IMG/VR virus record: IMGVR_UViG_3300017963_000192
Span: 153,704 to 217,703 of that record
Strand: one strand, 5' to 3'
DNA: 64,000 bases
The notes beneath the pieces were generated by a model, which worked only from the letters and a program-made list of their open reading frames with translations, was not told the origin of the DNA and ran no database searches. Positions 26,501 through 64,000 of this stretch are shown in pieces. Position 1 is the first letter of the stretch, and every line of letters begins with the position of its first letter. Made by a program: the position numbers and the translations under genes.

Positions 26501-29347
26501 GTTGGTGATTTAGTTTATTGTTATGATGAAAAAGGCGAATTGAAAATATCAAAAGTTACGAATGTTTTTAATAATGGCATTCAAGATTGTATTAAATTAA
26601 AATGGCAAAGTAGTGGTTCTGGAGATATTGGAGAATTAGTATTAACACCAAATCATTTAGTAAAACACAAATATAAAGGGTGGATTCGTGCTGATTCATT
26701 AAATCGATATGATAAGATTTTTCATTTAAGAAAGTCCTTACAGAAAAATGGTAGAATTAGATTATATGGGACTAACAAGTTTATGAAATTTGAGGAGCAA
26801 GTTATAAAGGAAGAATATTTTAAAGCTCCATCTAGTTTATTAATTCATCATAAAGATGAAAATCCGTCAAATAATAAAATTTCAAATTTTGAAATTTTAT
26901 CTAATTCAAAACATTCAAAATTACACTCTATAAAATTGGTAAAAGAGGGAAGAATTAAATGGGATCATTTAGATAAGTATAGAGATAAGATAAAACGAAG
27001 AACTGGTAAAAACCATTATTATTGGAAAGAATTTAATAAAGAAGATCTTATCCAAATGTTAGAAAATGCTAATGGAGTGATATCTAATTTAAAGATTGAC
27101 AAAGAAACATTTAGAAATAAATGCAAATTAGTTGGTTTTGATTATAAAAAATATAAATATTTTTATTCTAAAAAAGTTGGATATCTTGATGAGAAAAAAA
27201 TTGTTAATGTTTTATATAAATTTGAAAAAGAATCCAATTCATTTGATAAATGTGCAAGGTACTTAGGAATAGGTAGATCTAAACTTAAAGAGTTATGTGA
27301 CTATTACGGTATTTCTACAAATCATATGATTTTATCTGTAACACCTTTTGGAAAATGCAAAGTATATGATCTAGAAGTAGAAGAACACCACAATTTCATT
27401 GCTAATGAAATTTGTGTTCATAATTGTCTTTCCCCACCTATTCAAACCATCCCTAGAAAGAACAAGATTAGAAACATGATTGTTCCCAGAGATGGAGGAA
27501 AGCTTGTTGTTGCAGACTTATCTCAAATAGAATTAAGAATCTTGGCAATGATTAGTGGTGATCAAAGAATGATAAACGCTTTTGAAAGTGGTGTTGATTT
27601 TCATACTGCAACAGCTTGCAGTATGTTTAGAATAAATCCTAATGAATTTGATAAAAATAATTCTAAACATAATGAATTTAGAAGTGTTGCAAAATGTGTT
27701 CATCCATCATCTTTAATTATTTATAATCTTGAAATAAAAAGAATGTGTGATATTGTTAAGAATAGTAAAGAAGATTCTTTTGAAAAAATACAAGGACATA
27801 TTTGGAACGGTAAAAATATTGTTGATTTAAAAAACACATATAAATCTAACAAAGGTAAGAGAATATTAATTTCTGCTCACAAGTCTATTTTAGTGTGTTC
27901 TGAAAATCATCAAGTACAGTTAAAAGATGGTTCGTTAAAAAAGGCAAAAGATATTAAAGAGAAAGATGTTTTATGTGATGTATCCTTTCCTGATTTAGTG
28001 TCAATGCCACAAAGTATTAAGATAAATCCTTTTAATGGAGAAGATGAACAAGGATTAACATTATGGTTAGATGAAAAATGGGCATATTTAGCTGGCGTAT
28101 ATACAGGAGATGGGTGCTATGCTGAAAAACATATTAGTATTTCTACTGGAAGTGAAAGCAAACACGAAGATTGGAAGGATGTTTTAATAAAAGCTTTTGA
28201 TGATGTCGGAATTTATGCTAAAAAAAGAGATTCTCATTTTGATAAAAAAAGAAATAGAAATAGTAAAAGTAGTTCTGTGTACGTTGGTTCAACTAGAACA
28301 AGAAGATTTTTTGATAAACTTGAACTGACAAAAGAGGGTGAAGGAAAAACATTAAGAGTTCCTCTGTGGGTGTTAAATAATTATGATAATTGTTGGGCAT
28401 TCCTTGGTGGATTATTGGATACTGATGGAACAGTTACAACTGATCCATTAAGTAGAACATTGTCTATTACAACAAAGTCTTGGGAGTTAATGCAGGATTT
28501 AACAGTATTGTTAAACAGATTAGGAATTGAATACGGAATAGAAAATACTTTCAATAAAACATATAAAAGATATTATTTTAGAGTGCAGATTTATGCACGA
28601 AATACTGAAGAGATTTTTAATAGAAAGATAATGCGTTGTCCATACAAAGTTGAAAGATTAAAGAAAAAAGTAGAGACCCTTAAAAACAGAAGAAGATCTA
28701 ACCATAACAAAGATAATTTTGTTAAAAGAATTGAAGTATTAGATGAGGGAGATTTATTTGATATTGAAGTTGATTCTAAAGATCATCTTTATTGGGTAAA
28801 TGGTATAGTAACTCACAACACAATAAACTTCGGAATAGCTTACGGAAGAGGTGCTTATTCTATCGTTGTTGAGTTAAGAGACTTCTATGGTATTGATATT
28901 ACTCAAGATGAGGCAAGTAACTTTATTAACACTTTTTATGGGACGTATAAAGATGTTAAAAGATGGATGATAGAGACAGTTAATTTTGCAAGAACTTATG
29001 GATATGTTGAAACAATTTATGGTAGAAAGAGATTTTTACCTATGATACATAGTTCTAATACAGAAGATAAAGCGAAAGCAGAGAGACAGGCAGTTAATAC
29101 TATGATTCAATCTTCTGCATCAGACGTGAACAACATTGCACTTATTAGAATAGGGAAATGGTTGGACGATAGCAATAAAAAATCTATGCTAATCGGATGT
29201 GTTCACGATAGTATTTTAGTAGATAGCCCAGAGGATGAGGTTGAAGAAGTTTCTGAAAAACTTGTGGAGTGTATGACTAAAGATGTACCACGAATAACTA
29301 TTCCGCTTAAAGCGGATTTAGATATATTAGACAAATGGGAGAAATGA
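23564..29347 (+). CDS. polA: Family-4 uracil-DNA glycosylase fused to 3'-5' exonuclease/family A DNA polymerase, with three inteins
   Basis: CxxC, IGEAPG, FVG.SG, TNAVK|CRP, YHPAY (UDG); DLETSG, DADVT (exo); TATGRLS, ADLSQIELR, AK|TINFG, QAVNTMIQS, VHDS (PolA); about 860-aa extein. Confidence 0.93.
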   Translation: MQVEEIRAIPQGIRTRPQMLDKVFDNKFCKKCKLYQCAKNPYIEGRGNKNAKLLIIGEAPGKNEDEMGQVFVGSSGKTLQERLNRYDIDYYITNAVKCLDGKSLVKTKEGNKRINWIVKNKWDGEVLSINKDGEFVWKNIYGWHRSLINNRDIYKISIIDGKNNPNGKPNILVTEDHIIITERGEVLAKDLVSGKDKIATGTPYFGGHRSEQLIIGSLMGDAFVSNRNYLEERHSLKQREYLLLKTKLLEYWKPSISKGTIRNNKKSYSYIGYRISSTLFFKQLRKQFYKNGKKIFPEHYVNRLNIFGLAIIFMDDGYGRYYDNNKHSRSEDTFQVEIALGKIDEKSAKNIVNRFKELGYDVYVTNKDIYRLRFKYKKAYKFLKDIAKYVPHSMRYKLPESLRDYPFMESAYKPEKTKTYYSEINVSKVDYSKLSNSKSVYCIDVKDTHNFVTPSGVVHNCRPTDAQSKNRTPRPVEIKCCLPFTMKIIEEIKPKVILTLGRIPMSQILGLNLSMKIMRGHTYYHPELNVTIIPTYHPAYLGRVNDALYYKQFENDLLIANNLAYAPAKRILPPSPISMKDPIEIKEYLESLLNVDAIAIDLETSGTDHINDKITDISFCAKAGEGVHISWDDIIPHFELLSEVMMSDAVKVGQNFTFDIKFLRMAGVDVNNYSFDTLLAEHMLTMSYEKKEVSGLYKLKNMAWKGTPMGGYEEVLGSGGIKKAVKKKEKKKDEDVFQGNLFENPNEKKNEELEKFANVIDVIRKKKLEDSGLEPLEYYSAMDADVTFRLFQRQKPLIDKDFSFPFYEIVMPLSWTLMRVEENGIRLNSDYMNSIKIDNLENMERCKQELFNLAGKEFNLNSTDDLKDLIFNKLKITPSDEFKTKPSKTYPDGQYSTDEKAIAYYSSKNPALNFLIEYRKLYKENSTYIDGFKKFMQEDTWRVHPNYLQHSTATGRLSCISEGTKITMVGEERNIENVKVGDLVYCYDEKGELKISKVTNVFNNGIQDCIKLKWQSSGSGDIGELVLTPNHLVKHKYKGWIRADSLNRYDKIFHLRKSLQKNGRIRLYGTNKFMKFEEQVIKEEYFKAPSSLLIHHKDENPSNNKISNFEILSNSKHSKLHSIKLVKEGRIKWDHLDKYRDKIKRRTGKNHYYWKEFNKEDLIQMLENANGVISNLKIDKETFRNKCKLVGFDYKKYKYFYSKKVGYLDEKKIVNVLYKFEKESNSFDKCARYLGIGRSKLKELCDYYGISTNHMILSVTPFGKCKVYDLEVEEHHNFIANEICVHNCLSPPIQTIPRKNKIRNMIVPRDGGKLVVADLSQIELRILAMISGDQRMINAFESGVDFHTATACSMFRINPNEFDKNNSKHNEFRSVAKCVHPSSLIIYNLEIKRMCDIVKNSKEDSFEKIQGHIWNGKNIVDLKNTYKSNKGKRILISAHKSILVCSENHQVQLKDGSLKKAKDIKEKDVLCDVSFPDLVSMPQSIKINPFNGEDEQGLTLWLDEKWAYLAGVYTGDGCYAEKHISISTGSESKHEDWKDVLIKAFDDVGIYAKKRDSHFDKKRNRNSKSSSVYVGSTRTRRFFDKLELTKEGEGKTLRVPLWVLNNYDNCWAFLGGLLDTDGTVTTDPLSRTLSITTKSWELMQDLTVLLNRLGIEYGIENTFNKTYKRYYFRVQIYARNTEEIFNRKIMRCPYKVERLKKKVETLKNRRRSNHNKDNFVKRIEVLDEGDLFDIEVDSKDHLYWVNGIVTHNTINFGIAYGRGAYSIVVELRDFYGIDITQDEASNFINTFYGTYKDVKRWMIETVNFARTYGYVETIYGRKRFLPMIHSSNTEDKAKAERQAVNTMIQSSASDVNNIALIRIGKWLDDSNKKSMLIGCVHDSILVDSPEDEVEEVSEKLVECMTKDVPRITIPLKADLDILDKWEK
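23855..24943 (+). mobile_element. Intein pol-1 in the UDG domain (363 aa, LAGLIDADG)
   Basis: NAVK|CLDGKS...TEDH...GSLMGDA...FMDDG...FVTPSGVVHN|CRP. Confidence 0.9.
26438..27424 (+). mobile_element. Intein pol-2 (329 aa, HNH endonuclease)
   Basis: TGRLS|CISEGT...TPNH...IHHKDENPSNN...NFIANEICVHN|C. Confidence 0.9.
27695..28819 (+). mobile_element. Intein pol-3 in motif B (375 aa, LAGLIDADG)
   Basis: SVAK|CVHPSS...SENH...GVYTGDG...GLLDTDG...NGIVTHN|TINFG. Confidence 0.9.
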
Positions 29348-33557: not shown

Positions 33558-36092
33558 ATGGCGAATCCTTTAAAAGATATCGGAGGAATACCTGTAAATG
33601 AAGATAATGAAGCTTTAATCATTACCAATGCTATTAAGAACAAAAAGAACAGAGAAATATTTGTTCGACACATTGATTATAGGTTATTCAGAAGAAAAGA
33701 ATTTCAAACAATGGCGTTTGCTATTCAAGCTATTGAAACCTCAAATATGGAAATGAATACTGATGCTATTATTTTGAAATCTAAAACTTGTCCTATTAAA
33801 AAAATAGTTGATTTTGAATTTATAGAAACACTTAAAGAAAATTTTCCTGAAGTGCCGGAGTCAAATTTTATAGAACATCTTGTAACACTTCGTACTGATA
33901 GTGTCAAAGCTCAAGCATTTGATTTGGTTCATAAGTCTCTTATTAGATCCTTTATGAATCCTCAAGCTGGAATAAAGGATCTCGAAGTTAGGGTACAGGC
34001 ATTACAAGATTTAATAACATCTGGATACTCTTCAACAGAATGCCAGTTTCTTACTATGAAAGAGGCTGTAGCTGAATATGTATATGATAAAGAGCATGGG
34101 GTAAGGAGTAGAACTACTGGTTTCAGACAATTAGACGAAAAACTTATTCAAGGCTTGAAAGAGGAATGGATTTCAATTATTGCAGGTCTGGCGAACATGG
34201 GGAAGACACATACTTTAAACACTCCTATAATAATGTATGATGGGAGTATTAAAATGATTCAAGATATTGAAGTTGGGGATTTGTTGATGGGCGTTGATTC
34301 TCTGCCTAGAAAAGTTACTCGAACATGGACGGGTGTAGATGATATTTATACAATAAATCAATGTAAAGGGGATGCATATGAAGTAACTGGTCAACATTTA
34401 TTATCTTTAAAAAGAAGTTATAATCAATATTATAAACCAGATAAAAAATTACCTATCAATGAAAGAAGAATAACTCATCCAAAAGGAGAAGTTTTAAATA
34501 TATCTGTATTAGATTATTTAAAAAAAGGGAACGGGTGGAAGACTATGTGGAAAGGTTACAAATCAGAGGGATGGGAAATGCCTGAAAGAAAAGTTGAATT
34601 GTCTCCTTATTTTTTAGGAATCTGGTTATCTGATGGAAATAATGATAGTCAATTAATTACAAATCCTGACATTGAAGTTAGAAAATTTTTAAAAGATTAT
34701 GCTTCATCTTTTAATATGTATTATACCGAAAGACAAAAAAAAGATTCTGATTGTTATACTTGTGTTATAAAAAAACGTGGTGAAAATAAAAATATTATAA
34801 AAGATTATCTCGAAGATTATAATTTATTTAAAAATAAACACATTCCTGATGATTTTAAATATACTTCACGCAAGAAAAGAATGGAACTTTTAAGTGGTTT
34901 ATTAGATGGTGATGGTTATTTAACATACGTAACCTATGAAATTTCAACAAAATATGAACAATTAAAAGATGACATCTTATATTTAGCAAGAAGTTTGGGT
35001 TTTTATTCAGTAGCTAAATATGAAAAAAAGAAAATCAAATCAATTGGTTTTGAGGGTAAATATTGGCGTATAAGAATAGTAGGAGATACGTACCTAATAC
35101 CGTGTAAAGTTAAAAGAAAAAAAGCAAAAAAAATAAAAAGGAGAAAAAACTTTTTATTTACAGGATTTAATGTAAAATACAAAGGAAAAGACAAGTTTTA
35201 TAGTATTTCTCTGGAAGATACTACGGATCAATTGTATTTATTAGGAGATGGAACTGTAACCCATAATTCTTCCTTTGCTTTGTCTATGATGAATAATTTA
35301 TCAAACAAAGGAGTTCCTTCCGCAAATTTTGCATTAGAGATGCCTAATCAATCTATTATAACAAAGTTACTTGCTTTTAATACAAATCTTACTATTAGAA
35401 AGGTAGCTATTGAATGGGATAATTTAGATGTTATAGAAAAGAAAGTCTATGAACATGAACTTGAAAGACTTGCAAGAAATCAATACATATATTTGAATGA
35501 TAAACCATCACAAGGATTGTCAGATATTAAAGAACAGACTATGTTACTTCAAGATAAAATAGCAACTGTTGATAAATCTTTTGATGGATATATTGTAATA
35601 TTAATAGACTTGTTTGGGAAAATAAAAGAATTTCTTGGAAGTGATAACTTTGCTAGAGATTATGAGCAAAGATGTAATGAAGTTCAGGCTATGACACGGG
35701 AACTTGGTGTACATATGTGTTTAGTAGCACAAATAGTTAGATCAGTAATGCAACGTAAATTTAAACGACCTTCTCTAGCTGATATTAAAAATGCTGGTGC
35801 ATTAGGAGAGATTGCTGATTTAATTTTTGGTATTCACCGCCCAAATTATGACCCCGAAGTAGCACTCAAAAGTCAATTAGCATACGGACAAGGTAATGAA
35901 GAAATTGAACCAAATCCTGATGAGAATTTAGCAGAGATATTAATACTTAAAGGTAGAATGGCACAAGCCAATCAACTTGTAAACTTTTATTTTGATCCTA
36001 ATACAACACGGTTTAGTCCTATTGAGGAAGATTATCAGAATGAGCTAAACGCAACTAAATTCGATGATGATGATTGGGATAATCAATTTTGA
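33558..36092 (+). CDS. dnaB: Replicative DnaB helicase with one intein
   Basis: TTGFRQLD, IAGLANMGK|SS, FALEM, VAQI, RPSLADIK, ADLIFGIHR. Confidence 0.9.
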   Translation: MANPLKDIGGIPVNEDNEALIITNAIKNKKNREIFVRHIDYRLFRRKEFQTMAFAIQAIETSNMEMNTDAIILKSKTCPIKKIVDFEFIETLKENFPEVPESNFIEHLVTLRTDSVKAQAFDLVHKSLIRSFMNPQAGIKDLEVRVQALQDLITSGYSSTECQFLTMKEAVAEYVYDKEHGVRSRTTGFRQLDEKLIQGLKEEWISIIAGLANMGKTHTLNTPIIMYDGSIKMIQDIEVGDLLMGVDSLPRKVTRTWTGVDDIYTINQCKGDAYEVTGQHLLSLKRSYNQYYKPDKKLPINERRITHPKGEVLNISVLDYLKKGNGWKTMWKGYKSEGWEMPERKVELSPYFLGIWLSDGNNDSQLITNPDIEVRKFLKDYASSFNMYYTERQKKDSDCYTCVIKKRGENKNIIKDYLEDYNLFKNKHIPDDFKYTSRKKRMELLSGLLDGDGYLTYVTYEISTKYEQLKDDILYLARSLGFYSVAKYEKKKIKSIGFEGKYWRIRIVGDTYLIPCKVKRKKAKKIKRRKNFLFTGFNVKYKGKDKFYSISLEDTTDQLYLLGDGTVTHNSSFALSMMNNLSNKGVPSANFALEMPNQSIITKLLAFNTNLTIRKVAIEWDNLDVIEKKVYEHELERLARNQYIYLNDKPSQGLSDIKEQTMLLQDKIATVDKSFDGYIVILIDLFGKIKEFLGSDNFARDYEQRCNEVQAMTRELGVHMCLVAQIVRSVMQRKFKRPSLADIKNAGALGEIADLIFGIHRPNYDPEVALKSQLAYGQGNEEIEPNPDENLAEILILKGRMAQANQLVNFYFDPNTTRFSPIEEDYQNELNATKFDDDDWDNQF
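34206..35267 (+). mobile_element. Intein in DnaB Walker A (354 aa, LAGLIDADG, Thr at position 1)
   Basis: MGK|THTLNTPIIMYDG...TGQHLLSL...GLLDGDG...LGDGTVTHN|S. Confidence 0.88.
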
Positions 36093-37054
36093 TTAATGTA
36101 TCTGACATATTAGATGATATCGGATTAGATTATAGAGAAGTTGGAAAAAGCTTTAGAGTTAAGTGTTGGCATCACGATGAAGGTGTCCCGTCAATGTTTA
36201 TTAATAAAGAATCTGGAGTGTATCATTGCTTTAGCTGTCATAGTTCTGGAAACATATTTCAACTTATTACAGAACATCTTGGATTAACTGGATTCGATTT
36301 AGTAAAATACTTAGCTGACTTCTCTATTAACTTGACAGAGGAAGAAATATATAATAGATTAAAAAATCACATAGGATCTAGAAAACCAAAAGAAGTAAAA
36401 CAAGTACGAAAGCTTATAAGAATACCAGAATACAAAACCATAGAAAATAATGATTATCTTGAAAATAGAGGAATAACTAAAGAAGAAATAAAACAATGGG
36501 AAATGGGGGTTGTTTCTGGCAATCAAACACACAAAGAATTCTTACCTTATAGAAATTGGATTTATATTCCTATAATTCAAAATGGTGTTTTTGAAAATTA
36601 TTTCTTGAGAAGTCCTTTTAACAATAGAAAGATATATGGTAAATTTCCTAGAAAAAATCTTTTATTTGGATTAGATAGTTGTACAGATTACAGTAAAACT
36701 ATTTATGTAGTAGAGGGTATCTTTGATATGATTTTTTTGAGAAAGATAAGAGTTCAAGTTGTTGCAGCTCTTTCTAACAGGTTGCATAAAGAACAATTAG
36801 AACTCCTTAAAAAATATAAAAGAGTAGTACTCGTGCCAGATGCGGACAGCCCTGGATTTGAGTTAGTTAAAACAGCTTTACCTTTAATATATAGTACTAG
36901 TCTCGGAGTATGTTCTATCCCTAATGGTAAGAAAGATACTGCTGATTGTACTATAGATGAATTAATAGAAATGACTTATAATGAAAAAAGTATTTTAGAT
37001 TTTATTTTTAATGAGAGGTTAGATTATGGAAATGCGAGACACCAGTTCTTCTAA
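36089..37054 (+). CDS. dnaG: DNA primase (CHC2 zinc finger plus TOPRIM)
   Basis: CWHHDE..PS...YHCFSC; YLENRGI; VVEGIFD; VPDADSPG. Confidence 0.85.
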   Translation: MINVSDILDDIGLDYREVGKSFRVKCWHHDEGVPSMFINKESGVYHCFSCHSSGNIFQLITEHLGLTGFDLVKYLADFSINLTEEEIYNRLKNHIGSRKPKEVKQVRKLIRIPEYKTIENNDYLENRGITKEEIKQWEMGVVSGNQTHKEFLPYRNWIYIPIIQNGVFENYFLRSPFNNRKIYGKFPRKNLLFGLDSCTDYSKTIYVVEGIFDMIFLRKIRVQVVAALSNRLHKEQLELLKKYKRVVLVPDADSPGFELVKTALPLIYSTSLGVCSIPNGKKDTADCTIDELIEMTYNEKSILDFIFNERLDYGNARHQFF

Positions 37055-37238
37055 TATTGCACAGGTTGGATACGATACAGCAGAAAAAGTATTACGTATT
37101 GTATTTCAAACAGGAGCAATATATGATTACACAAATGTGGACGAGCTAACTTATCGACAGTTATTGCAATCTCCTTCGGTCGGTAAATTTTTTCACAGAT
37201 ACATCAAAGGTAGCTTTGATTTTAATAGAATTAAGTAA
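37026..37238 (+). CDS. KTSC domain protein
   Basis: SSSNIAQVGYD...LRIVF..GAIYDY.NV...LL.SPSVGKFF. Confidence 0.85.
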   Translation: MEMRDTSSSNIAQVGYDTAEKVLRIVFQTGAIYDYTNVDELTYRQLLQSPSVGKFFHRYIKGSFDFNRIK

Positions 37239-37245
37239 AAAATTG

Positions 37246-37291
37246 TTGACTATTAATAGGGTTTTGTATACATTAGATATGTGTATACATT
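37246..37291 (+). promoter_or_regulatory. sigma70-type promoter overlapped by two TGTATACATT boxes
   Basis: TTGACT-N17-TACATT; TGTATACATT at 37265 and 37282. Confidence 0.7.
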
Positions 37292-37322
37292 CATTTAAAT
37301 TGTTTATAAGGAGATTATAGAA

Positions 37323-37493
37323 ATGATTAGAAAACAATTCTATTTTACTGAAAGTGAGGATAAGGCTGTTAAAAAAGTTGCGAAAGAAAGCGGGCTTCCA
37401 GCAGCAGAAATAATAAGGAGGTTTATAGATTATTGTTTAAATCAAGAGAATTTAGATAATATTATATATAAAACGAGGAAAAACAAGAAATGA
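37323..37493 (+). CDS. Ribbon-helix-helix regulator (56 aa, not in ORF track)
   Basis: MIRKQFYFTESEDKAVKKVAKESGLPAAEIIRRFID; AAGGAG RBS; ATGA-coupled to the next gene. Confidence 0.75.
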   Translation: MIRKQFYFTESEDKAVKKVAKESGLPAAEIIRRFIDYCLNQENLDNIIYKTRKNKK

Positions 37494-37918
37494 AAGTAAT
37501 TGTAAATGTGGATGGTATTTTACCAGTATTAGATGATATGATAATAAAGGGTTTGGAACAAGAGGGTTATCCCACTTGTTTAGGGAATATGATACCCCCA
37601 TTATTAATGAGAAAAATTGAGGTAGATGAAGAAAAAGTACTAAAAGTAAAAGGGCTTACTCCTACAACTGAAATTGTTTTGGAAGATGTCTCGCAAGTTG
37701 TGGAAAGTAATGTTGATATTGTAAATAATAGGGTTATGACTCAAGAAGGAATTGACTATATTAATGAGTATAAAACAAATAGGGCAGAAATGTATGTAAA
37801 GCAGTTAGTTAAGTGTATTAGTTGTGAATATGTTGATACGTGTTATAAACTAACCACAACTTATTTAACACTCATAAGTATAGAAGAAAAAGCAAAGGAG
37901 ACTAATTCGACATGTTAG
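37490..37918 (+). CDS. Hypothetical protein in the tubulin operon
   Basis: Overlaps both neighbours; C-terminal CISC...C. Confidence 0.55.
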   Translation: MKVIVNVDGILPVLDDMIIKGLEQEGYPTCLGNMIPPLLMRKIEVDEEKVLKVKGLTPTTEIVLEDVSQVVESNVDIVNNRVMTQEGIDYINEYKTNRAEMYVKQLVKCISCEYVDTCYKLTTTYLTLISIEEKAKETNSTC

Positions 37919-38991
37919 GAAAAACAGTACAGATTATAGGAGTGGGTCAATGTGGGTGTAGGCTTGGTATGACTTTTGAAAAACAAGGAATACCAGCACT
38001 TTACATTAATTCAGATGAAGTTGATTTTAGGGATTTTAATGCGAGACCAGATCAAACTCTCTTGATAGAAGGTTCTGGTACTGGGGGATCTCCTTCAAAA
38101 GGAGCTGAATTATTTAGAAAGCACAAGAGTTCTATTATTAGTTTTTTAAGAGAACGTTTAGATAAAAATAAAATAATATGGGTATTGTGGGGAAGTGGAG
38201 GAGGTACTGGAAATTCAATAGGACCTCTTTTATTAGAGTATTTATCTGAACATAAATATGTTACTGGATGTATTACAACTTTACCGCCTAAGATGTTAGA
38301 TATTCTGGCAACTGATAATGCTATGAAGACTTTGAAAAAGTTGAAAGATGTTAATACGAGAATGACTGTACTCGCAGACAATGAATACCTTGTAAATAAG
38401 ATTGGTGTTGGTGGTGATTGGTGGAAGAAAGTTAACAGCCATATCTGTTCTACAATTCTTTCTGCCTTTGATTTGTTAAGAGAAGGGAAGACTACTCAAA
38501 GTGGGCTAGGTTCTATTGATAAGGGTGAGATAATGAGGATTATGCAATATGGAAACGGTTTAACAGATGTTAGAGTTGTATATCTTTCTCCTTATGATTT
38601 TGATTTAGAGAATAAAGATTTGTTAAAGAAATTACTTGAGCCTTCTCTTATTGAAGGTTATAACTATAAAAATACATTAGCTTATCTTGTAGGAATAGAT
38701 TTGCCAAGGCAAGGAAATTACACAGAGATTTCAAAGAAGATATTTGATAGTACAAGAGCGAGCTTTGGAAATGCTATATCACGATTAGGCATGTTCGTTG
38801 ATCCTTTTCTTAATGATGTTATAAGAGTAACAATGATTAATGCTGGATTGAAACTACCTAAATCTTTAAAGGTAAAGATGAATAATTTAAAGAGGGATGA
38901 GGCTAGATTTATTGAGAAAAGAAATAGAGAAGAAACTATGGACTTCTCTGAATTAGAAGAAGGTGTTTTAGAAGAAGACTTTCAATTGTAA
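37912..38991 (+). CDS. Tubulin/FtsZ-family GTPase (TubZ/PhuZ-like)
   Basis: IIGVGQCG, YINSD, GTGG, tubulin signature GSGGGTGNS, LADNE, T7-like SIDKGE; acidic tail. Confidence 0.85.
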   Translation: MLGKTVQIIGVGQCGCRLGMTFEKQGIPALYINSDEVDFRDFNARPDQTLLIEGSGTGGSPSKGAELFRKHKSSIISFLRERLDKNKIIWVLWGSGGGTGNSIGPLLLEYLSEHKYVTGCITTLPPKMLDILATDNAMKTLKKLKDVNTRMTVLADNEYLVNKIGVGGDWWKKVNSHICSTILSAFDLLREGKTTQSGLGSIDKGEIMRIMQYGNGLTDVRVVYLSPYDFDLENKDLLKKLLEPSLIEGYNYKNTLAYLVGIDLPRQGNYTEISKKIFDSTRASFGNAISRLGMFVDPFLNDVIRVTMINAGLKLPKSLKVKMNNLKRDEARFIEKRNREETMDFSELEEGVLEEDFQL

Positions 38992-38994
38992 GAG

Positions 38995-39423
38995 GTGAAT
39001 ATGGATTTAAATATAACTCAAGTTTGTAATACTGTTCAATATTTTGAAAAGCCTGTTAAAACTAATTACTCGACAAGAGAGGGAGGCTTTCCTACAGACA
39101 CATTTAAAATTAGCCAGACGTACGTTGATTTTATTATAGAGATATCTGGTCTTACGATGATGACAATGACACGCAATTGTGATTATGATATTTTTAGAGA
39201 TATGATATTACATGCACTTCCTCCTAGATTTAGAAATGCTGATTTGGAGATTATAGAGTTAATGAATCATCCGATGGAACACGCAACAAAATTTGGTATT
39301 GTAATAAAAGGGTACAACGGAAATGTTTATACTCCGTCAGAAACAAAGCGGTGGATTTATTGTCCGAGTTGTGGAGTACCATTGAAAAACCATAGTTGTG
39401 AATACTGTGGATTACAATTATAA
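38995..39423 (+). CDS. Hypothetical protein with C-terminal zinc ribbon
   Basis: CPSCG...CEYCG. Confidence 0.5.
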   Translation: MNMDLNITQVCNTVQYFEKPVKTNYSTREGGFPTDTFKISQTYVDFIIEISGLTMMTMTRNCDYDIFRDMILHALPPRFRNADLEIIELMNHPMEHATKFGIVIKGYNGNVYTPSETKRWIYCPSCGVPLKNHSCEYCGLQL

Positions 39424-39433
39424 GGAGAAAAAA

Positions 39434-39604
39434 ATGACTAAACTTATTAGATGTAAAGAATGTGGAGAAACTTTTGAACCAATTATTGTTGATGATAAGG
39501 TTCACAATAAAGGAATCAAACAAGATTGTCCTAATTGTGGAGAAGTAAATTTATTTAAACCCTCTGAAGTTGATGGTAAGGGTGATGACGTATTAGGAAA
39601 ATGA
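39434..39604 (+). CDS. Small zinc-ribbon protein
   Basis: CKECG...CPNCG; AAGGAG RBS before MTKL. Confidence 0.55.
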   Translation: MTKLIRCKECGETFEPIIVDDKVHNKGIKQDCPNCGEVNLFKPSEVDGKGDDVLGK

Positions 39605-39827
39605 TTATGTCAGGAAAACGAGCAGTTTCTTTATATATTAGAGATGAAAAAGAATACAAAGCCTTGAGAGACGAGGTTAAAAATTTGTGGTATAAAAAAT
39701 ACGGAATTGCATTATCAATAGGAGAAGTTGTTATGTATTCTTTAAATTTTACTAAAGAGGAGTTATTGAAAACGGACAAGTCTAGGAACAATCAAACTCC
39801 TTCTAAAAAATATTCGAGGTTGAGTTC

Positions 39828-41288
39828 TTGATAGTATCTGATAAAATATATATACGATTAAGTGAAATAGAAAACCATGTTTCAAACATATGTAATATGT
39901 TTACTTATCCAAATCCAGAGTACCACCGAAATAAAAAATTGAAATTATCTGTAAGAAAAATATCACCCTCATTAAAGAACTATAAGTTTCAAGGTGTGGG
40001 AGAAGGTAGGATGTTGATTTTACCAAGAGGTTGTTTATCAAAACTCAAGGATTATTTTAAGAATAATAATATGTTTGTAAGAGTTTTGGATGATAGGATA
40101 GAACACCCTCCTATTGATTGTAAACTGAAAGAAACTAATTTAGAACCCCAACAGCATCAATTAATTAATGCATTTGTAAATGATGAGGGAGGTCTTGTGG
40201 AAGCTCTTCCAGGAGCGGGAAAAACTATAGGAATACTAGGTTTGATAGACACCATCAAACAACCAACTATAATACTTATGCACGAAGAAGGTTTGCAGAA
40301 ACAATGGATTAAAGAAATAAAAAAGCGTATGAAAGGTAACTTTGTACTTGGAAGGTGGGATGGTAATCACAAGACTAGGGGTGATATTGATGTTGGTCTT
40401 GTTCAAACAGTTCACAAACAGGTTGATTTAAATCCCAACTTTTTAGATTCCTATGGAATGATTGTTTTGGATGAAGCCCATCACGGAAGTGCTGCAACTT
40501 TCTTGAAGACTTTAAATTCTTCTCGTTCTAAATATAGAGTTGGTGTTACTGGTACAGTAGAAAGAAAAGATCAAATGCATATCCTTCTTTATGATGTAAT
40601 AGGAAAAGTTCTCCTTGTTATTAAGGACAAGGATTTGAAACATAGAATCACCCCTTTTGAATATGAGATGGTAAATACTAACATAAGTATAGAATTACCT
40701 ACAAATCAAAGATGGGTTAATAAAAAAAGGGTAAACGTACTAAATCCAACAGGAACAATAACTTTGTTGACAAAAATAGATAAAAGGAATACAATGATTA
40801 TTAATAATATAATTAATGACATTGAAATAGGTCATTTCCCGTTAGTTCTTTCTGACAGAGTGGATCACATTACTTTTCTAGATTACAGATTGAACGAGAT
40901 GGGATACAATTCTATACTTATAAAGGGGGGTGCAACTAAAAAATCTGAAAAGATTAACTGGGATGAAATTAGGGAAGATACAACTATACAAGTTATTTGT
41001 GCATCAACAAAGAAAGCTGAAGAAGGTTTAGATTTACCAAGACTTTCTTCGTTACATTTAACATGCATGTCATCTAACTATCCCAAATTTAAACAAAAGA
41101 TAGGGAGAATCAGGAGAAAATTAGAGGGGAAACCTACTCCTAAAGTCTACTATTATGTTGATAATTTAGCGTATATTTTTGAATTAAGTAAAGATACATA
41201 TGTTAAGAAACACATTTTAAGTTATACAGCTAAAAATGTTTCTAAATATTTTACCAAACTACAGGATGAATATTATGAAGAAAAATAA
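39828..41288 (+). CDS. Superfamily 2 DEAH helicase (UvsW/D10-like)
   Basis: PGAGKT, VLDEAHH, GVTGT, EGLDLP, QKIGRIRR. Confidence 0.88.
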   Translation: MIVSDKIYIRLSEIENHVSNICNMFTYPNPEYHRNKKLKLSVRKISPSLKNYKFQGVGEGRMLILPRGCLSKLKDYFKNNNMFVRVLDDRIEHPPIDCKLKETNLEPQQHQLINAFVNDEGGLVEALPGAGKTIGILGLIDTIKQPTIILMHEEGLQKQWIKEIKKRMKGNFVLGRWDGNHKTRGDIDVGLVQTVHKQVDLNPNFLDSYGMIVLDEAHHGSAATFLKTLNSSRSKYRVGVTGTVERKDQMHILLYDVIGKVLLVIKDKDLKHRITPFEYEMVNTNISIELPTNQRWVNKKRVNVLNPTGTITLLTKIDKRNTMIINNIINDIEIGHFPLVLSDRVDHITFLDYRLNEMGYNSILIKGGATKKSEKINWDEIREDTTIQVICASTKKAEEGLDLPRLSSLHLTCMSSNYPKFKQKIGRIRRKLEGKPTPKVYYYVDNLAYIFELSKDTYVKKHILSYTAKNVSKYFTKLQDEYYEEK

Positions 41289-43049: not shown

Positions 43050-46000
43050 ATGGGAATAGGTGATAAACTATTAGATAAAAATTACGAACCTTCCTCACAA
43101 CCAACAAACAGAATAGAATCTCCATTTTTTAAGAAGATTATAAAATGTCCGGTAAATTTTACTGAGGATATTATTGAGTATGTTGAATCTCCAGAATTTT
43201 TAGGTATGACTTTACGCCCACTTCAGAGAAAATTTCTTGAAGAGCTTTTTTATGTTAATCCAGATGGTTCATATAAATATGAACAAGGAGTTATGTGTTG
43301 TGGAATGAGGGGTGGTAAATCGCACTCTATAAAAGAGCAAATTTTAATGTATGATGGAACATTAAAAGAGATTGGGAAAATACAGATTGGTGATATTGTA
43401 ATGGGACCAGATTCTACTCCAAGAAAGGTTCTTAATACCTCACGAGGAGAATCTGAAATGTTTGAGATAAAACAATCATGTGCTGATACATATATTATAA
43501 ATGATGCACACATTCTTTCTTTAAAGAAAGCTCAGTCTGTAAACTGTTCTCTTGGAAAAAACAGGAAGTCAAATGTTAGATACGGTAATGAACCAGATAT
43601 AGTCAACATTCCTATAAAAGAATATTTAAAGAAATCTAAAAAATGGAAATATTTCTTTAGAGGATATAAAGCAGGATTGATTAAATTCGAGGAACAACCT
43701 ATCTCTATTGATCCTTATTTGGTTGGACAGTGGTTAGCAGACGGTCATGCTACTGAGTTAAGAATTACAAAAACCGATGCTGATTTAAAAGAATGGATTT
43801 ATAAATTTGCTAAAGAAAATGATTTGATTGTAAAAGAATACCAAAAAAAGAATACAATTGCTAAAGATTTTTATTTTGATAAATCTAATGGTAACTCGAA
43901 TAAAATATGGAATGAATTTAAAAAATTAAATCTTCCAGATAATAAACATATCCCGCAATGCTATATTAGTAATAGCAAAGAAATAAGATTAGAATTGCTT
44001 GCTGCTTTAATTGATGGAGATGGTCATCATAGATTAAATAGACATGGATATGATATTGCATTTTCTAATGAGACATTGGCAATGGATACCAAAAGATTAG
44101 CAGATACCCTTGGATATAGAACTCATATTCAAAAAAAGAAAACATCTTGTAAAAATAAAGAAACTGGTTATAATTTTGAAGGGGAAGCTTGGAGACTTTC
44201 CATCTATGGCAATGTATGGGAAATACCTTGTAAGGTTAAAAGAAAACAATATGTTCATAATGGTAAACGTACTAACAAAGAAGAGGGTTTATCATCATTA
44301 AAAGTCACCTCTATTGGTTGGGGTAAATATGCTGGAATAGGTGTTGATGGAGATAACCTGTATTGCCTTGCAGACGGAACGGTTACACATAATTCTTGGA
44401 CTGCTGCTTTCATAACAACCTTTATGACTCAACTAATGTTGAAGTACGATAATCCGGCACAAGAGTTTGGACAAGCCCCTGGTACTCGTATTACCGGACA
44501 GATTATAGCATCTTCAGAAGTACAAGCGAAAGAGACAGCTTATGCGGCAGTTGAGTCCATTCTTGATTATGGTCATTGGTGGCAGAAATATATTGCGTAT
44601 TTAAAAGAGAGAGAAGAAACTGAAGGAAAACATACATTATATCAAGAATTAAAATTAGCTAGAGAATTTCCAGAAAAGAATGTTGCTGTACTTTCTCTTC
44701 ACAGTAACTCTGCTGCCCTTGCTGGTAAGACAAGTTATTGTGTTGTTCTTGATGAATTAAGTCGATTTGATGTGGCAGATGGGATGGTGCAATCTAGAAC
44801 ACAAAAATCAACAGCAAACGCTGTTTATGATACGGTTGCTAGAGCGTGCTCAAGTCTTAAACAGATAAGCAAGGTCGTCACGATATCGAGTCCTATGTAT
44901 GAGGACGATTACACAATGAGATTATTGTGTATGGCAAAGGATTGTTGGGTAGGAGAAATGTCTCCTATTATTGATGCTTTGAGAAACAAAACTGTAACCA
45001 AAGTTCCTACCCTATATGGTATGCACGCCACAACCTTTGAGTTAAACCCAAAAACAGAAGAAAATCCTGGAGGTTTTGTTAGAGGGGAAGATTTTGAATC
45101 AGCAAGACTACAGAATCCCGAAGCCTACAATCGTGACTACCTTGCTTGTCCGCCTTCTACTGTTAATCCGTTCTTCGAGTTTCCAGAAAAAATTGATAGA
45201 GTTGTTATAGATAGGGAAAAGAAAGTTGCCTTTTCTGATAAGATGATAGAGGAATCTATTCAAACAGCAAATGGGATTGAGATGCGAATGTATATTGGTA
45301 AGAATATAATGCCTCTTAAACCTGATAAAATGAATAAGTATTATATTTGTGTTGACCAGGGCGAAAAGCGTGACCACTTTGCTTTGGCAATGGGGCATGT
45401 TGAATCTATGCCTATTGATGTTACTAACGATAAAGGTGATATCGAAAAAGCGAGTAGATTAAAGATAATAATAGATTTTGTTACTGGTTGGATTCCAGAT
45501 AAACAGAATAGAATAACAGTTTCATTTGCAAATGTGGAGGAAGTAATTAAAGTATTATGTCAGAGTTTCCATGTTGGCGTGGTCACTTATGACCAATGGT
45601 CTAGTGCAGAATCAATACAAAGATTATTTTCCGAAGGTGTTAATACACAACAATTAGGTGCTACATTATCAATGTACGAAACATTTAAACAATTAATTTA
45701 TCAAGGTCAATTAGAACTTCCTAAACATGAGATACTTTTAAAAGAATTAAAACAGTTAACATTAATAAAAGGTAAGAAACTCGATCACCCATCTTCTGGA
45801 AGTAAAGACTATTCTGATGCTGTCTGTCGAGTATGTTGGTTATGTTATGAAGATTATATTATGGAGACTGTTCATGGGCAGCATATGTTACCTTATAAAC
45901 AAAATCTTCCAACACTACGTTCGGTTGCATCTGCTTATGAGATTATGAGACAAAACGATATGAATCCTCATGGAGCTATTTGGAATCAATCTCAAAGTGG

Positions 46001-46067
46001 TCAAGGAGTTTTTGGTGATACTTTTATTGTAAGAACTAATGTGATTCCTAATATTAAAGGTAATTAG
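43050..46067 (+). CDS. terL: Terminase large subunit with one intein
   Basis: LRPLQ adenine motif, Walker A GMRGGK|S, Walker B VVLDEL, TISSP, nuclease ICVDQG...D, LDHPSSGSKDYSDA. Confidence 0.88.
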   Translation: MGIGDKLLDKNYEPSSQPTNRIESPFFKKIIKCPVNFTEDIIEYVESPEFLGMTLRPLQRKFLEELFYVNPDGSYKYEQGVMCCGMRGGKSHSIKEQILMYDGTLKEIGKIQIGDIVMGPDSTPRKVLNTSRGESEMFEIKQSCADTYIINDAHILSLKKAQSVNCSLGKNRKSNVRYGNEPDIVNIPIKEYLKKSKKWKYFFRGYKAGLIKFEEQPISIDPYLVGQWLADGHATELRITKTDADLKEWIYKFAKENDLIVKEYQKKNTIAKDFYFDKSNGNSNKIWNEFKKLNLPDNKHIPQCYISNSKEIRLELLAALIDGDGHHRLNRHGYDIAFSNETLAMDTKRLADTLGYRTHIQKKKTSCKNKETGYNFEGEAWRLSIYGNVWEIPCKVKRKQYVHNGKRTNKEEGLSSLKVTSIGWGKYAGIGVDGDNLYCLADGTVTHNSWTAAFITTFMTQLMLKYDNPAQEFGQAPGTRITGQIIASSEVQAKETAYAAVESILDYGHWWQKYIAYLKEREETEGKHTLYQELKLAREFPEKNVAVLSLHSNSAALAGKTSYCVVLDELSRFDVADGMVQSRTQKSTANAVYDTVARACSSLKQISKVVTISSPMYEDDYTMRLLCMAKDCWVGEMSPIIDALRNKTVTKVPTLYGMHATTFELNPKTEENPGGFVRGEDFESARLQNPEAYNRDYLACPPSTVNPFFEFPEKIDRVVIDREKKVAFSDKMIEESIQTANGIEMRMYIGKNIMPLKPDKMNKYYICVDQGEKRDHFALAMGHVESMPIDVTNDKGDIEKASRLKIIIDFVTGWIPDKQNRITVSFANVEEVIKVLCQSFHVGVVTYDQWSSAESIQRLFSEGVNTQQLGATLSMYETFKQLIYQGQLELPKHEILLKELKQLTLIKGKKLDHPSSGSKDYSDAVCRVCWLCYEDYIMETVHGQHMLPYKQNLPTLRSVASAYEIMRQNDMNPHGAIWNQSQSGQGVFGDTFIVRTNVIPNIKGN
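43320..44393 (+). mobile_element. Intein in TerL Walker A (358 aa, LAGLIDADG, Ser1)
   Basis: GGK|SHSIKEQILMYDG...HILSLK...ALIDGDG...LADGTVTHN|S. Confidence 0.88.
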
Positions 46068-49865: not shown

Positions 49866-49922
49866 TTGTTTTTCTCCTCAATATCTTTATCTATCAATCT
49901 TCTTAGTTGTATACATTAGGAA

Positions 49923-55005: not shown

Positions 55006-55052
55006 TAACTAATGTATACATTCAATATACATTAGTTACTCGAAATTGTCAA
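55006..55052 (-). promoter_or_regulatory. sigma70 promoter overlapped by a 13-bp inverted repeat
   Basis: TTGACA-N17-TATATT on the - strand; TAACTAATGTATA-N7-TATACATTAGTTA. Confidence 0.75.
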
Positions 55053-63957: not shown

Positions 63958-64000
63958 CGCCTAAACCTTCGCCTAAACCTTCGCCTAAACCTTCGCCTAA
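63958..64000. repeat. 12-bp tandem repeat (CGCCTAAACCTT)n running off the window end
   Basis: Three perfect copies plus a partial fourth. Confidence 0.9.

What the first reader, a model, noticed from the sequence alone, without database searches (positions are those of the whole stretch)
37246..38991. RHH-ORF-tubulin operon with tandem palindromic boxes: possible phage type III partition or spindle module
Seen: a promoter overlapped by two TGTATACATT repeats (17-bp period), then three translationally coupled genes: an unannotated 56-aa RHH protein, a 142-aa unknown with CxxC, and a tubulin/FtsZ GTPase. Established: TubZRC systems use a small DNA-binding adaptor (TubR, winged helix) and repeats, whereas PhuZ of nucleus-forming phages acts without one. 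Inference: a variant with an RHH regulator or adaptor and a novel accessory protein that positions phage DNA.
Basis: partly seen in the sequence, partly recalled or inferred. Interest (0 to 1): 0.6.

Follow-up and report, generated by a model that had tools for sequence, protein, structure and literature searches.

The report
New phage tubulin operon with partner
An uncultivated giant bacteriophage carries a real operon for a small DNA-binding repressor, a new four-cysteine protein and a TubZ-like tubulin; the last two form a conserved pair found only in a clade of giant phages, a phage cytoskeleton module I found described in none of the papers searched.

Summary
Two exact TGTATACATT boxes (37265-37274, 37282-37291) sit on the -10 and start region of a sigma-70-like promoter. 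Three overlapping genes follow: a 56-aa RHH protein, a 142-aa protein and a 359-aa tubulin/FtsZ GTPase.

The window is the end of a 217.7-kb IMG/VR jumbo myovirus contig.

The tubulin belongs to a discrete metagenome-only family of about 100 clusters. Its fold is closest to plasmid TubZ (TM 0.79). By sequence it is equally far from TubZ, FtsZ and CetZ, and far from PhuZ.

The 142-aa gene lies directly upstream of the tubulin in 26 of 29 related loci. It has four invariant cysteines, is acidic, and has no detectable fold or sequence relative outside this family.

The RHH gene is present in only about half the lineages, with at least 3-4 gains or losses. Wherever it has its own promoter, TGTAT boxes lie there; they are absent from RHH-less loci. 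The same box also sits on a second promoter at 55.0 kb.

The RHH is therefore best read as a transcriptional autorepressor, not a TubR-like centromere adaptor. No centromere-like repeat array exists.

The core is a two-gene cytoskeletal module inside the replication gene block. Its role in positioning phage DNA is inferred, not shown.

The parts
37246..37274 (+). Sigma-70-like promoter: TTGACT, 17-nt spacer, TACATT
   Evidence: Scan, (9 of 12 matches). A TTGAC(T/A) -35 recurs upstream of the cassette in most related loci. Function is inferred.
37265..37274 (.). Operator box 1, TGTATACATT (palindromic core TGTATACA); it contains the -10 hexamer
37282..37291 (.). Operator box 2, identical 10-mer 17 bp downstream, at about the transcription start
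   Evidence: TGTAT boxes co-vary with presence of the RHH gene.
37323..37493 (+). 56-aa basic ribbon-helix-helix protein, proposed autorepressor
   Evidence: Invariant residues R3, Q5, Y7 (strand) and I31, R32, R33, D36. Family pI median 9.5.
37490..37918 (+). 142-aa acidic four-cysteine protein (C30, C109, C112, C118), the conserved tubulin partner gene, orphan family
37912..38991 (+). 359-aa TubZ-like tubulin/FtsZ-superfamily GTPase with a basic C-terminal helix and an acidic D-x-D-F tail
37026..37238 (+). KTSC-domain protein, the conserved upstream neighbour (context)
   Evidence: E 5.9e-22. Synteny.
39601..39831 (+). 76-aa basic protein conserved downstream of the tubulin and overlapping the helicase gene (context)
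   Evidence: Only a faint resemblance to the RHH profile.
39828..41288 (+). SNF2/DEAD-type helicase, conserved downstream neighbour (context)
55011..55052 (-). Second promoter carrying the same box: TTGACA, 17 nt, TATATT, inside an inverted repeat with 13-nt arms and a 7-nt spacer that contains AATGTATACATT. It lies upstream of gene 54972-54364.
49908..49917 (.). Fourth exact copy of the 10-mer, intergenic, 45 nt upstream of gene 49865-49347

Best explanation
This is the promoter-proximal part of an early, replication-block operon of an uncultivated jumbo myovirus of about 220-250 kb that uses host RNA polymerase with phage sigma factors.

1. RHH. The 56-aa RHH protein is a transcriptional autorepressor. 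As dimers it binds the TGTATACA-type palindromic boxes that cover the -10 and the start site of its own promoter. It also binds the same box at one or more other promoters, such as the one at 55.0 kb. This sets the dose or timing of the downstream genes.

2. Core module. The conserved functional core is the translationally coupled pair: the 142-aa four-cysteine protein plus the TubZ-like tubulin.
- The tubulin has an intact GTP pocket and T7-loop acidic residues. It is expected to form dynamic GTP-dependent filaments.
- The acidic four-cysteine protein probably holds a metal (Zn or Fe-S) that staples its N-domain to a helical hairpin. I propose it is a filament modulator or cargo adaptor.
- Given its fixed position between primase and helicase, the module most likely positions or separates replicating phage DNA or the replication factory in the host cell.

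Shown here:
- Family and fold of the tubulin.
- Conservation of its motifs.
- Synteny and coupling of the pair.
- RHH family membership.
- Co-variation of boxes with the RHH gene.

Inferred:
- DNA binding by the RHH.
- Filament formation.
- Binding between partner and tubulin.
- Metal binding.
- The cellular role.
For: Tubulin:
- PF00091 at 60.9 bits.
- AF2 model pLDDT 88.4.
- Best fold matches are B. cereus TubZ 4ei7 (TMq 0.79, E 2e-23) and Bt TubZ 2xka (0.77). CetZ scores 0.71 and FtsZ 0.63-0.68.
- Invariant G96-G97-G98-T99-G100, and S201, I202, D203, E206 in the position of the T7 loop.
- The family is discrete. Members score at least 398 bits on the family HMM, whereas TubZ, FtsZ and phage G score 50-88 bits and PhuZ 24.6. 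The family is monophyletic on a long branch.

Partner gene:
- Present in 26 of 29 distinct loci with enough upstream DNA. In 23 of those 26 it ends within -8 to +43 nt of the tubulin start.
- It was never lost inside the clade that has it (1 change on the tree).
- Four invariant Cys; confident model, pLDDT 88.5.
- An exhaustive HMM search of 1.84 billion proteins finds 97 representatives. Apart from fragments (46-112 aa), a 224-aa protein matching over its C-terminal part and a 1487-aa repeat protein, they are stand-alone proteins of 127-156 aa.

RHH and boxes:
- 9 of 12 orthologues hit Pfam RHH families, and the family is basic.
- TGTAT/ATACA occurs 14 times in 490 nt upstream of RHH genes that have an intergenic promoter, in 7 of 7 loci. 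It occurs 0 times in 840 nt in 12 RHH-less loci. Background is 4.0 per kb.
- The boxes sit at or just after the -10.
- All four exact 10-mers in the genome are intergenic. One lies on a strong TTGACA-17-TATATT promoter.

Context:
- The order DnaB, DnaG, KTSC, [RHH], partner, tubulin..., helicase, sigma factor is conserved from 39% to 63% tubulin identity.
- Sigma factors are present.
Against: - No experiment and no expression data are available.
- The predicted-complex test of tubulin plus partner gave no verdict, so it supports neither side.
- The partner is absent from the three most divergent tubulin loci (L014, L015, L028). Their tubulins keep the same C-terminal tail, so the tail is not specific to the partner.
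- Box spacing is 17 bp here, 13 bp in L066 and 11 bp at the second promoter. No single operator geometry is evident.
- The RHH-box link rests on co-variation among related phages, with about four independent lineages.
- The lifestyle (lytic or plasmid prophage) is unknown, so a partition role is not excluded.
Confidence: 0.55

Rival explanations
1. A true type III (TubZRC-like) partition system of a plasmid prophage. The RHH would be the centromere-binding adaptor, replacing winged-helix TubR. The two boxes would be a minimal centromere, and the tubulin filaments would segregate phage genome copies at host division.
For: - The tubulin's fold is closest to plasmid TubZ.
- A small DNA-binding protein gene and its sites lie upstream of the tubulin and overlap the promoter. 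TubR-tubC does the same and also represses its operon (PMC6009700).
- No integrase was found, which is compatible with an episomal state.
- c-st phage shows that a phage can use TubZRC.
Against: - The RHH is absent from about half the lineages and was gained or lost at least 3-4 times, while the tubulin and partner persist.
- There are only two boxes in 84 bp, and no cluster of three or more box-like sites anywhere in 217 kb. tubC spans 130-350 bp of iterons.
- The same box lies on another promoter.
- The partner gene lies between the RHH and the tubulin.
- No repressor/lysogeny module or ParA was detected.
Confidence: 0.15
2. The 142-aa protein, not the RHH, is the TubR-like adaptor. On this reading it would be a diverged DNA-binding protein, in the gene position of TubR, that links DNA to the filament.
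For: - It occupies the tubR position, immediately upstream and coupled.
- It is as conserved as the tubulin.
- Foldseek's weak top rows were all MarR-type winged-helix proteins.
- A short V-L-T-x-x-G stretch aligns with the wing region of c-st TubR and phage G gp137.
Against: - These similarities are not significant: hhalign probability is at most 1.3%, and the second-look alignment gives Z 2.4 for MarR-type chains.
- The family is acidic, with pI median 5.6 and 4.6 in this window.
- There is no repeat array for it to bind.
Confidence: 0.1
3. The tubulin acts on the host rather than on phage DNA. It would be an FtsZ mimic or antagonist, with the partner as co-factor, that blocks or remodels host division or cell shape during infection.
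For: - By sequence profile the family is as close to FtsZ (M. jannaschii FtsZ 9e-21) as to TubZ.
- It is an early gene block behind a host-type promoter.
Against: - Identity to FtsZ is about 20%.
- There is no FtsZ_C domain hit.
- The tail motif is unlike known FtsZ C-terminal peptides (the comparison is from my own knowledge).
- The fixed position inside the replication genes points to phage DNA.
Confidence: 0.1
4. A PhuZ-type spindle that centres a chimallin phage nucleus.
For: - Weak PHROG hit to 'tubulin PhuZ' (E 1.1e-5).
- Acidic C-terminal tail.
- It is a jumbo phage.
Against: - PhuZ scores only 24.6 bits on the family HMM and is absent from the top fold and profile matches.
- Its grouping with the family in the tree is a 3.9-unit long branch.
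- No chimallin or phiKZ RNA polymerase beta was found by tblastn, and there is no Rpb2 domain.
- Sigma factors are present.
- These negatives are weak, because chimallins diverge fast and the contig is 88% complete.
Confidence: 0.04

Closest known systems
TubZ of Bacillus plasmids (pXO1 RepX 4ei7; pBtoxis TubZ 2xka), type III partition
   Same: - Best structural match: TMq 0.79 and 0.77 over about 370-390 columns, including the C-terminal helix.
- GTPase motifs are shared.
- A small gene lies immediately upstream and coupled.
- A DNA-binding protein with sites at the promoter is present.
   Different: - Identity is 15-18%. By sequence profile it is no closer than FtsZ or CetZ, and it forms a separate clade.
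- The upstream partner is not TubR-like.
- There is no iterated tubC.
- The tail is acidic.
- It is located in a phage replication block.
Clostridium phage c-st TubZ-TubR-TubY with tubC
   Same: Phage-encoded TubZ-type tubulin with a small upstream gene.
   Different: - c-st TubZ scores only 52.8 bits on the family HMM.
- c-st has winged-helix TubR, a centromere of about 350 bp and MerR-like TubY. None of these is found here.
PhuZ of nucleus-forming Chimalliviridae
   Same: Jumbo-phage tubulin. The acidic C-terminal tail could serve filament contacts, as I recall for PhuZ. There is no obligatory DNA adaptor.
   Different: Very distant in sequence and fold ranking. No chimallin or phage RNA polymerase was detected.
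Bacillus phage G gp137-gp138
   Same: The only isolate phage with any match (25% identity over 169 aa, E 8e-3). A small gene abuts the tubulin gene.
   Different: gp138 is TubZ-like (E 7e-12 to RepX) and lies outside this family. gp137 is unrelated to the 142-aa protein.
RHH repressors and centromere binders (CopG, Arc, NikA; ParG, ParR, omega)
   Same: Size, basic charge and strand-helix-helix pattern. Pfam RHH_1/NikA-like hits in 9 of 12 orthologues. Short palindromic sites on its own promoter.
   Different: It is not adjacent to a ParA or ParM motor. It is dispensable for the tubulin pair. There are only two boxes.
CetZ and archaeal FtsZ1
   Same: Comparable profile E-values (1e-19 and 9e-21). 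The T1 loop reads G-Q-C-G.
   Different: Lower structural similarity than TubZ. The context is bacterial-type: sigma-70 promoters, DnaB/DnaG and sigma factors.

Membership tests
Tubulin/FtsZ superfamily | GTPase domain (PF00091) above the curated cut-off | tested here: met
   60.9 bits against a cut-off of 33, residues 6-162.
Tubulin/FtsZ superfamily | Glycine-rich signature G-G-G-T-G-(S/T/x)-G (T4 loop) | tested here: met
   G96, G97, G98, T99 and G100 are invariant or nearly so in 44 sequences. They align to the same motif of RepX.
Tubulin/FtsZ superfamily | T7-loop acidic residues for polymerisation-dependent GTP hydrolysis | tested here: inconclusive
   G198, S201, I202, D203 and E206 are invariant, in the loop after the long central helix. 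Equating them with N-x-D-x-x-D/E of FtsZ and tubulin is my inference.
Tubulin/FtsZ superfamily | Two-domain tubulin fold | tested here: met
   pLDDT 88.4. At least 500 PDB matches with E <= 0.001; those listed are all TubZ, FtsZ or CetZ.
TubZRC type III partition | Motor belongs to the TubZ clade | tested here: inconclusive
   The best fold match is TubZ. But the family HMM scores TubZ no higher than FtsZ, and the tree places the family apart.
TubZRC type III partition | Small winged-helix TubR encoded upstream | tested here: not met
   Upstream gene against TubR of Bt and c-st: hhalign probability at most 1.3%. MarR-type chains score Z 2.4. The other small gene is an RHH.
TubZRC type III partition | Centromere of several direct repeats in blocks upstream of the adaptor gene (130-350 bp) | tested here: not met
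   The spacer is 84 bp with two boxes. There is no tandem array nearby and no cluster of three or more box-like sites in the genome. The definition is taken from PMC6009700.
TubZRC type III partition | Adaptor conserved with the motor | tested here: not met
   The RHH is present in 13 of about 24 lineages and needs at least 3-4 changes on the tubulin tree.
TubZRC type III partition | Low-copy episomal replicon that needs partition | not testable with these tools
   No integrase or ParA was found. The contig is linear and 88% complete. The lifestyle is unknown.
PhuZ spindle of Chimalliviridae | PhuZ-clade tubulin | tested here: not met
   24.6 bits on the family HMM. E 0.2-0.4 by phmmer. Not among the top fold matches.
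PhuZ spindle of Chimalliviridae | Chimallin and multisubunit RNA polymerase in the genome | tested here: not met
   tblastn with phiKZ gp54 and gp55 gives E >= 0.25. There is no PF00562 hit. Sigma factors are present. This is a weak negative.
FtsZ | FtsZ C-terminal domain (PF12327) | tested here: not met
   Only PF00091 hits here and in all family members. True FtsZ hits carry PF12327.
Ribbon-helix-helix (CopG/Arc/MetJ) DNA-binding proteins | RHH profile match | tested here: inconclusive
   The window protein is below cut-off (19.1 against 27 bits). 9 of 12 orthologues match RHH_1 and NikA-like. PDB profile hits to NikA, ORF56 and CopG are weak, E 0.04-0.5. No structure was predicted.
Ribbon-helix-helix (CopG/Arc/MetJ) DNA-binding proteins | Binds short symmetric sites, typically on its own promoter | tested here: inconclusive
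   The boxes co-vary with the gene: 7 of 7 loci against 0 of 12. Binding itself was not tested.

The most novel reading that the evidence does not exclude
The tubulin and the four-cysteine protein would form a distinct kind of phage tubulin system, separate from plasmid or prophage TubZRC and from the PhuZ spindle. The partner would carry an 'iron-staple'-type [4Fe-4S] cluster: one distant Cys plus C-x2-C-x5-C. I recall that spacing from AddB, Cas4 and WhiB-like proteins; it was not tested here. The partner would couple a TubZ-like cytoskeleton to the replisome, or gate it by redox state, in non-nucleus jumbo phages of anoxic habitats.
Probability: 0.15. Interest if true: 0.8.

Novelty: new variant of a known kind. 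Interest (0 to 1): 0.55.

Why it matters
Two phage tubulin systems have been studied in depth. One is TubZRC, which partitions plasmids and the c-st prophage. The other is PhuZ, which centres the phage nucleus.

This family adds a third, sizeable lineage of about 100 sequence clusters on contigs up to 253 kb. It is seen so far only in metagenomes. It has a TubZ-like fold but lacks both TubR/tubC and chimallin. Its obligatory partner has no recognisable fold.

It offers a compact two-protein system for asking how a tubulin filament is coupled to phage DNA replication without the known adaptors. It also offers a clean RHH-operator pair for regulated expression.

If the partner holds an Fe-S cluster, it would be the first redox-linked regulator of a prokaryotic tubulin that I know of.

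Tried and rejected
- **Isolate phages.** Megablast and tblastn against 50,697 isolate phage genomes gave no close relative. Only Bacillus phage G gp138 appeared, at E 8e-3.
- **IMG/VR scans.** The single-protein pattern scan of IMG/VR found nothing. The alignment-based scan found 14 loci.
- **Metagenome scan.** It was repeated with 14 rows.
- **Complex prediction.** Complex prediction on tubulin plus the 142-aa protein scored 0.01 and 0.00, below the mark. The tool gives no verdict, so this is not evidence either way.
- **Fold of the 142-aa protein.**
  - Foldseek against PDB had no match with E <= 0.001.
  - VIA-align across 48,161 chains gave a best Z of 4.4.
  - ESM Atlas gave TM <= 0.36.
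  - BFVD gave none.
  - Atlas features gave none.
  - The MarR-like rows from Foldseek were rejected at Z 2.4.
  - Comparison with TubR of Bt and c-st and with phage G gp137 gave probability <= 1.3%.
- **PhuZ in the tree.** PhuZ grouped with the family in the superfamily tree. I reject this as long-branch attraction, because PhuZ scores only 24.6 bits on the family HMM.
- **Downstream 76-aa protein as a second RHH.** No Pfam hit in 11 orthologues, and hhalign probability was 3%. Left open.
- **Sequencing runs.** No read or expression data were obtained, and read laying was not used.
- **Longer or shorter relatives.**
  - The word-index search is limited by length.
  - The exhaustive HMM search for the partner has no length limit. 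Besides stand-alone proteins of 127-156 aa and fragments of 46-112 aa, it found a 224-aa protein matching over its C-terminal part and a 1487-aa repeat protein.
  - One 577-aa tubulin hit, fused to polysaccharide-synthesis domains, looks like a merged gene call.
Full report
**1. What is in the sequence**

The window is the last 64 kb of a 217,703-bp IMG/VR virus record. It is identical to JGI contig Ga0180437_10000071, is 88% complete by CheckV and has 31% G+C.

The phage is a contractile-tailed jumbo phage:
- It has tail sheath, baseplate wedge and virion proteins.
- Inteins interrupt its DnaB, DNA polymerase, ribonucleotide reductase and large terminase.
- It has its own sigma factors.

At 37246-37274 there is a sigma-70-like promoter: TTGACT, 17 nt, TACATT. 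Two identical 10-mers, TGTATACATT, lie at 37265-37274 and 37282-37291. The first includes the -10 and the second sits just downstream.

Three genes follow:
- 37323-37493, 56 aa.
- 37490-37918, 142 aa.
- 37912-38991, 359 aa.

They overlap by 4 and 7 nt, and each has its own GGAG-type ribosome-binding site. No terminator-like site follows. The genes run on without gaps to a helicase at 39828-41288, so the unit is probably longer than three genes.

The box pair is unlikely to be chance:
- The 8-bp core occurs 6 times in the window against 1.3 expected.
- Only 3 of 5182 genome windows combine a local 10-nt repeat with two palindromes.
- This is the only tandem pair in the genome.

**2. The tubulin**

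The 359-aa protein matches PF00091 well above cut-off. A word-index search found about 100 clusters of 37-63% identity, all about 360 aa. Many lie on contigs of 80-253 kb.

No isolate phage has a close relative. The only hit among 50,697 records is Bacillus phage G gp138, at 25% identity.

The family is discrete. Its HMM gives members at least 398 bits. TubZ, phage G, FtsZ and other tubulin-like proteins get 50-88 bits, and phiKZ PhuZ gets 24.6.

Against solved structures, the family profile is about equally close to three groups:

| Solved structure | Profile E-value |
|---|---|
| M. jannaschii FtsZ | 9e-21 |
| pXO1 RepX/TubZ | 1.3e-20 |
| CetZ | 1e-19 |
| c-st TubZ | 1e-13 |

The AlphaFold model is confident (pLDDT 88.4). 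Its best fold matches are:

| Match | TMq |
|---|---|
| B. cereus TubZ | 0.79 |
| Bt TubZ | 0.77 |
| CetZ | 0.71 |
| FtsZ | 0.63-0.68 |

In a superfamily tree the family is one clade on a long branch. PhuZ joins it only as a 3.9-unit long branch, which I regard as an artefact.

The GGGTG signature and a conserved S-I-D-x-x-E stretch at the T7-loop position are invariant. The protein should therefore bind and hydrolyse GTP in a polymer.

The C-terminus is a conserved basic helix (N-N-L-K-R-D...K-K) followed by a disordered acidic tail that ends in D-x-D-F.

**3. Synteny**

I recovered 14 IMG/VR loci, 35 metagenome loci and several assembly contigs.

The order is conserved down to 39% tubulin identity: DnaB, DnaG, KTSC protein, [RHH], 142-aa gene, tubulin, [variable genes], a basic protein of about 80 aa, SNF2/DEAD helicase, sigma factor.

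The 142-aa gene:
- It is present in 26 of 29 distinct loci with enough upstream DNA.
- In 23 of those 26 it ends within -8 to +43 nt of the tubulin start.
- The three loci without it are the most divergent.
- On the tubulin tree its presence needs a single change.

The RHH gene:
- It is present in 13 of about 24 lineages.
- It needs four changes on the tree, at least three of them forced by supported branches.
- Where present, it usually overlaps the next gene by ATGA.

The stable core is therefore the pair, and the RHH is an optional add-on.

**4. The 142-aa partner**

It has no Pfam or PHROG family.

Invariant positions are P28, C30, G32, C109, C112, C118 and T122. That is one distant Cys plus C-x2-C-x5-C.

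The model is confident (pLDDT 88.5). It shows a small alpha/beta N-domain and a long helical hairpin, with three of the cysteines at the hairpin turn. I could not measure Cys-Cys distances, so metal binding is an inference.

No fold relative was found in PDB, BFVD or the ESM Atlas.

An exhaustive HMM search of 1.84 billion representatives found 97 proteins. Nearly all are stand-alone proteins of similar size, and the rest are fragments or partial matches in two longer proteins. The family is thus co-extensive with the tubulin family.

It is acidic (median pI 5.6; 4.6 here) and shows no similarity to TubR. That argues against a DNA-binding adaptor.

The complex prediction with the tubulin returned no verdict.

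**5. The RHH and its boxes**

The window protein alone is sub-threshold. But 9 of 12 orthologues match RHH_1 and NikA-like, and the alignment shows the typical pattern: a conserved R-x-Q-x-Y strand and an I-R-R-x-x-D second helix. The family is basic (pI 9.5).

Comparative footprint. In the seven loci where the RHH gene has its own intergenic promoter, the 70 nt upstream hold 14 TGTAT/ATACA pentamers, with at least one in every locus. L032 proved to have such a promoter too and holds three. Twelve RHH-less loci hold none in 840 nt. Background is 4.0 per kb.

The boxes lie on or just after the -10. RHH-less sister lineages (L019/L021, L037, L006/L007) give about four independent contrasts.

In this genome all four exact copies of the 10-mer are intergenic. 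One lies on the minus strand within TTGACA, 17 nt, TATATT. That promoter is embedded in an inverted repeat with 13-nt arms, upstream of an unknown 202-aa gene.

A protein whose sites sit on the -10 and start of two promoters behaves like a repressor with a small regulon.

There is no iterated array like tubC. According to PMC6009700, tubC spans 130-350 bp of direct repeats upstream of tubR.

**6. Interpretation**

The most likely reading has two layers.
- An RHH autorepressor sets expression.
- A two-gene cytoskeletal module, the TubZ-like tubulin plus a metal-stapled partner, works within the replication programme. It probably places or separates replicating phage DNA.

Evidence against a chimallin nucleus is weak but consistent. 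There is no chimallin or phiKZ-type polymerase by tblastn, no Rpb2 domain, and sigma factors are present.

No integrase or ParA was found, and there are two ParB_N proteins just upstream of the window. The lifestyle remains open, and a partition role cannot be excluded.

**7. Novelty**

I searched the held literature. The jumbo-phage reviews, the chimallin/PhuZ survey, the phage G paper and the TubZRC papers mention only the TubZ, PhuZ and phage G FtsZ-like proteins. I found no description of this family or of its partner.

I rate it a new variant of a known kind: a tubulin of known superfamily and TubZ-like fold, in a new clade, with a new obligatory partner and without the defining accessories of either known phage system.

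Limits:
- All functional statements beyond family and fold, conservation and co-variation are inferences.
- No expression data could be obtained.
- The standard bacterial code was used throughout, and nothing suggested another.

Noticed in passing
window 55011-55052 (minus strand): A strong sigma-70-like promoter (TTGACA, 17 nt, TATATT) lies inside an inverted repeat with 13-nt arms and a 7-nt spacer. The repeat contains the same box, AATGTATACATT. It sits upstream of an unknown 202-aa gene (54972-54364, no Pfam hit). It is probably a second target of the RHH.
   Followed up: partly
window 49908-49917: A fourth exact copy of TGTATACATT lies in the 57-nt spacer between two minus-strand genes, 45 nt upstream of gene 49865-49347. 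Only a weak promoter-like context is present.
   Followed up: partly
window 33558-36092, 6060-11870, 23564-29347, 43050-46067: DnaB helicase (844 aa), ribonucleotide reductase (1936 aa), DNA polymerase (1927 aa) and large terminase (1005 aa) are all much enlarged by intein or homing-endonuclease insertions. Relatives carry inteins at varying sites; for example, DnaB is intein-free in L003.
   Followed up: partly
window 39601-39831 and orthologues (alignment A7): A basic protein of about 76-87 aa always overlaps the start of the SNF2/DEAD helicase gene. It has a strand-helix-helix-like pattern (I-Y-V-x-D ... L-W-Y ... Y-G). It matches no Pfam family and only faintly resembles the RHH profile.
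   Followed up: partly
window 37026-37238: A KTSC-domain protein (E 5.9e-22) is the conserved gene between primase and the tubulin cassette in most relatives. In some, the RHH gene follows it with no promoter of its own.
   Followed up: no
window 38995-39423 and 39398-39604: Two small zinc-ribbon proteins (142 and 68 aa) lie between the tubulin and the 76-aa gene. Relatives have nothing there, or a sigma-like gene of about 200 aa, so this slot is variable.
   Followed up: no
G000:C1:145997-146971 and 147690-148607 (just upstream of the window): Two ParB_N-domain proteins (73 and 69 bits) are present with no ParA partner detected. Phage c-st also has a ParB-like nuclease near its TubZ operon.
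   Followed up: no
window about 46000: GC and AT skew flip sign where gene orientation switches from plus to minus. This marks the border between the replication block and the leftward genes.
   Followed up: no
protein P0042: One family member (49% identity, on a 209.5-kb contig) is labelled in NCBI as from a Methanofastidiosum MAG. The bacterial-type promoters, DnaB/DnaG and sigma factors of the family suggest a phage contig binned into an archaeal MAG.
   Followed up: no
L060:3704-5131 (Bacillus phage G gp137-gp138): Phage G's FtsZ-like gp138 is TubZ-like (E 7e-12 to RepX). It is abutted upstream by a 98-aa gene, a possible TubR-like pair in a 497-kb phage.
   Followed up: partly
window 63958-64000: A perfect 12-nt tandem repeat (3.6 copies) runs into the end of the contig. 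It may explain why the assembly stops there.
   Followed up: no
L013:4753-5004, L034:218-1600, L047:488-805: In three relatives an extra gene (83, 460 or 105 aa) is inserted between the partner gene and the tubulin. Strict coupling of the pair is therefore not universal.
   Followed up: no
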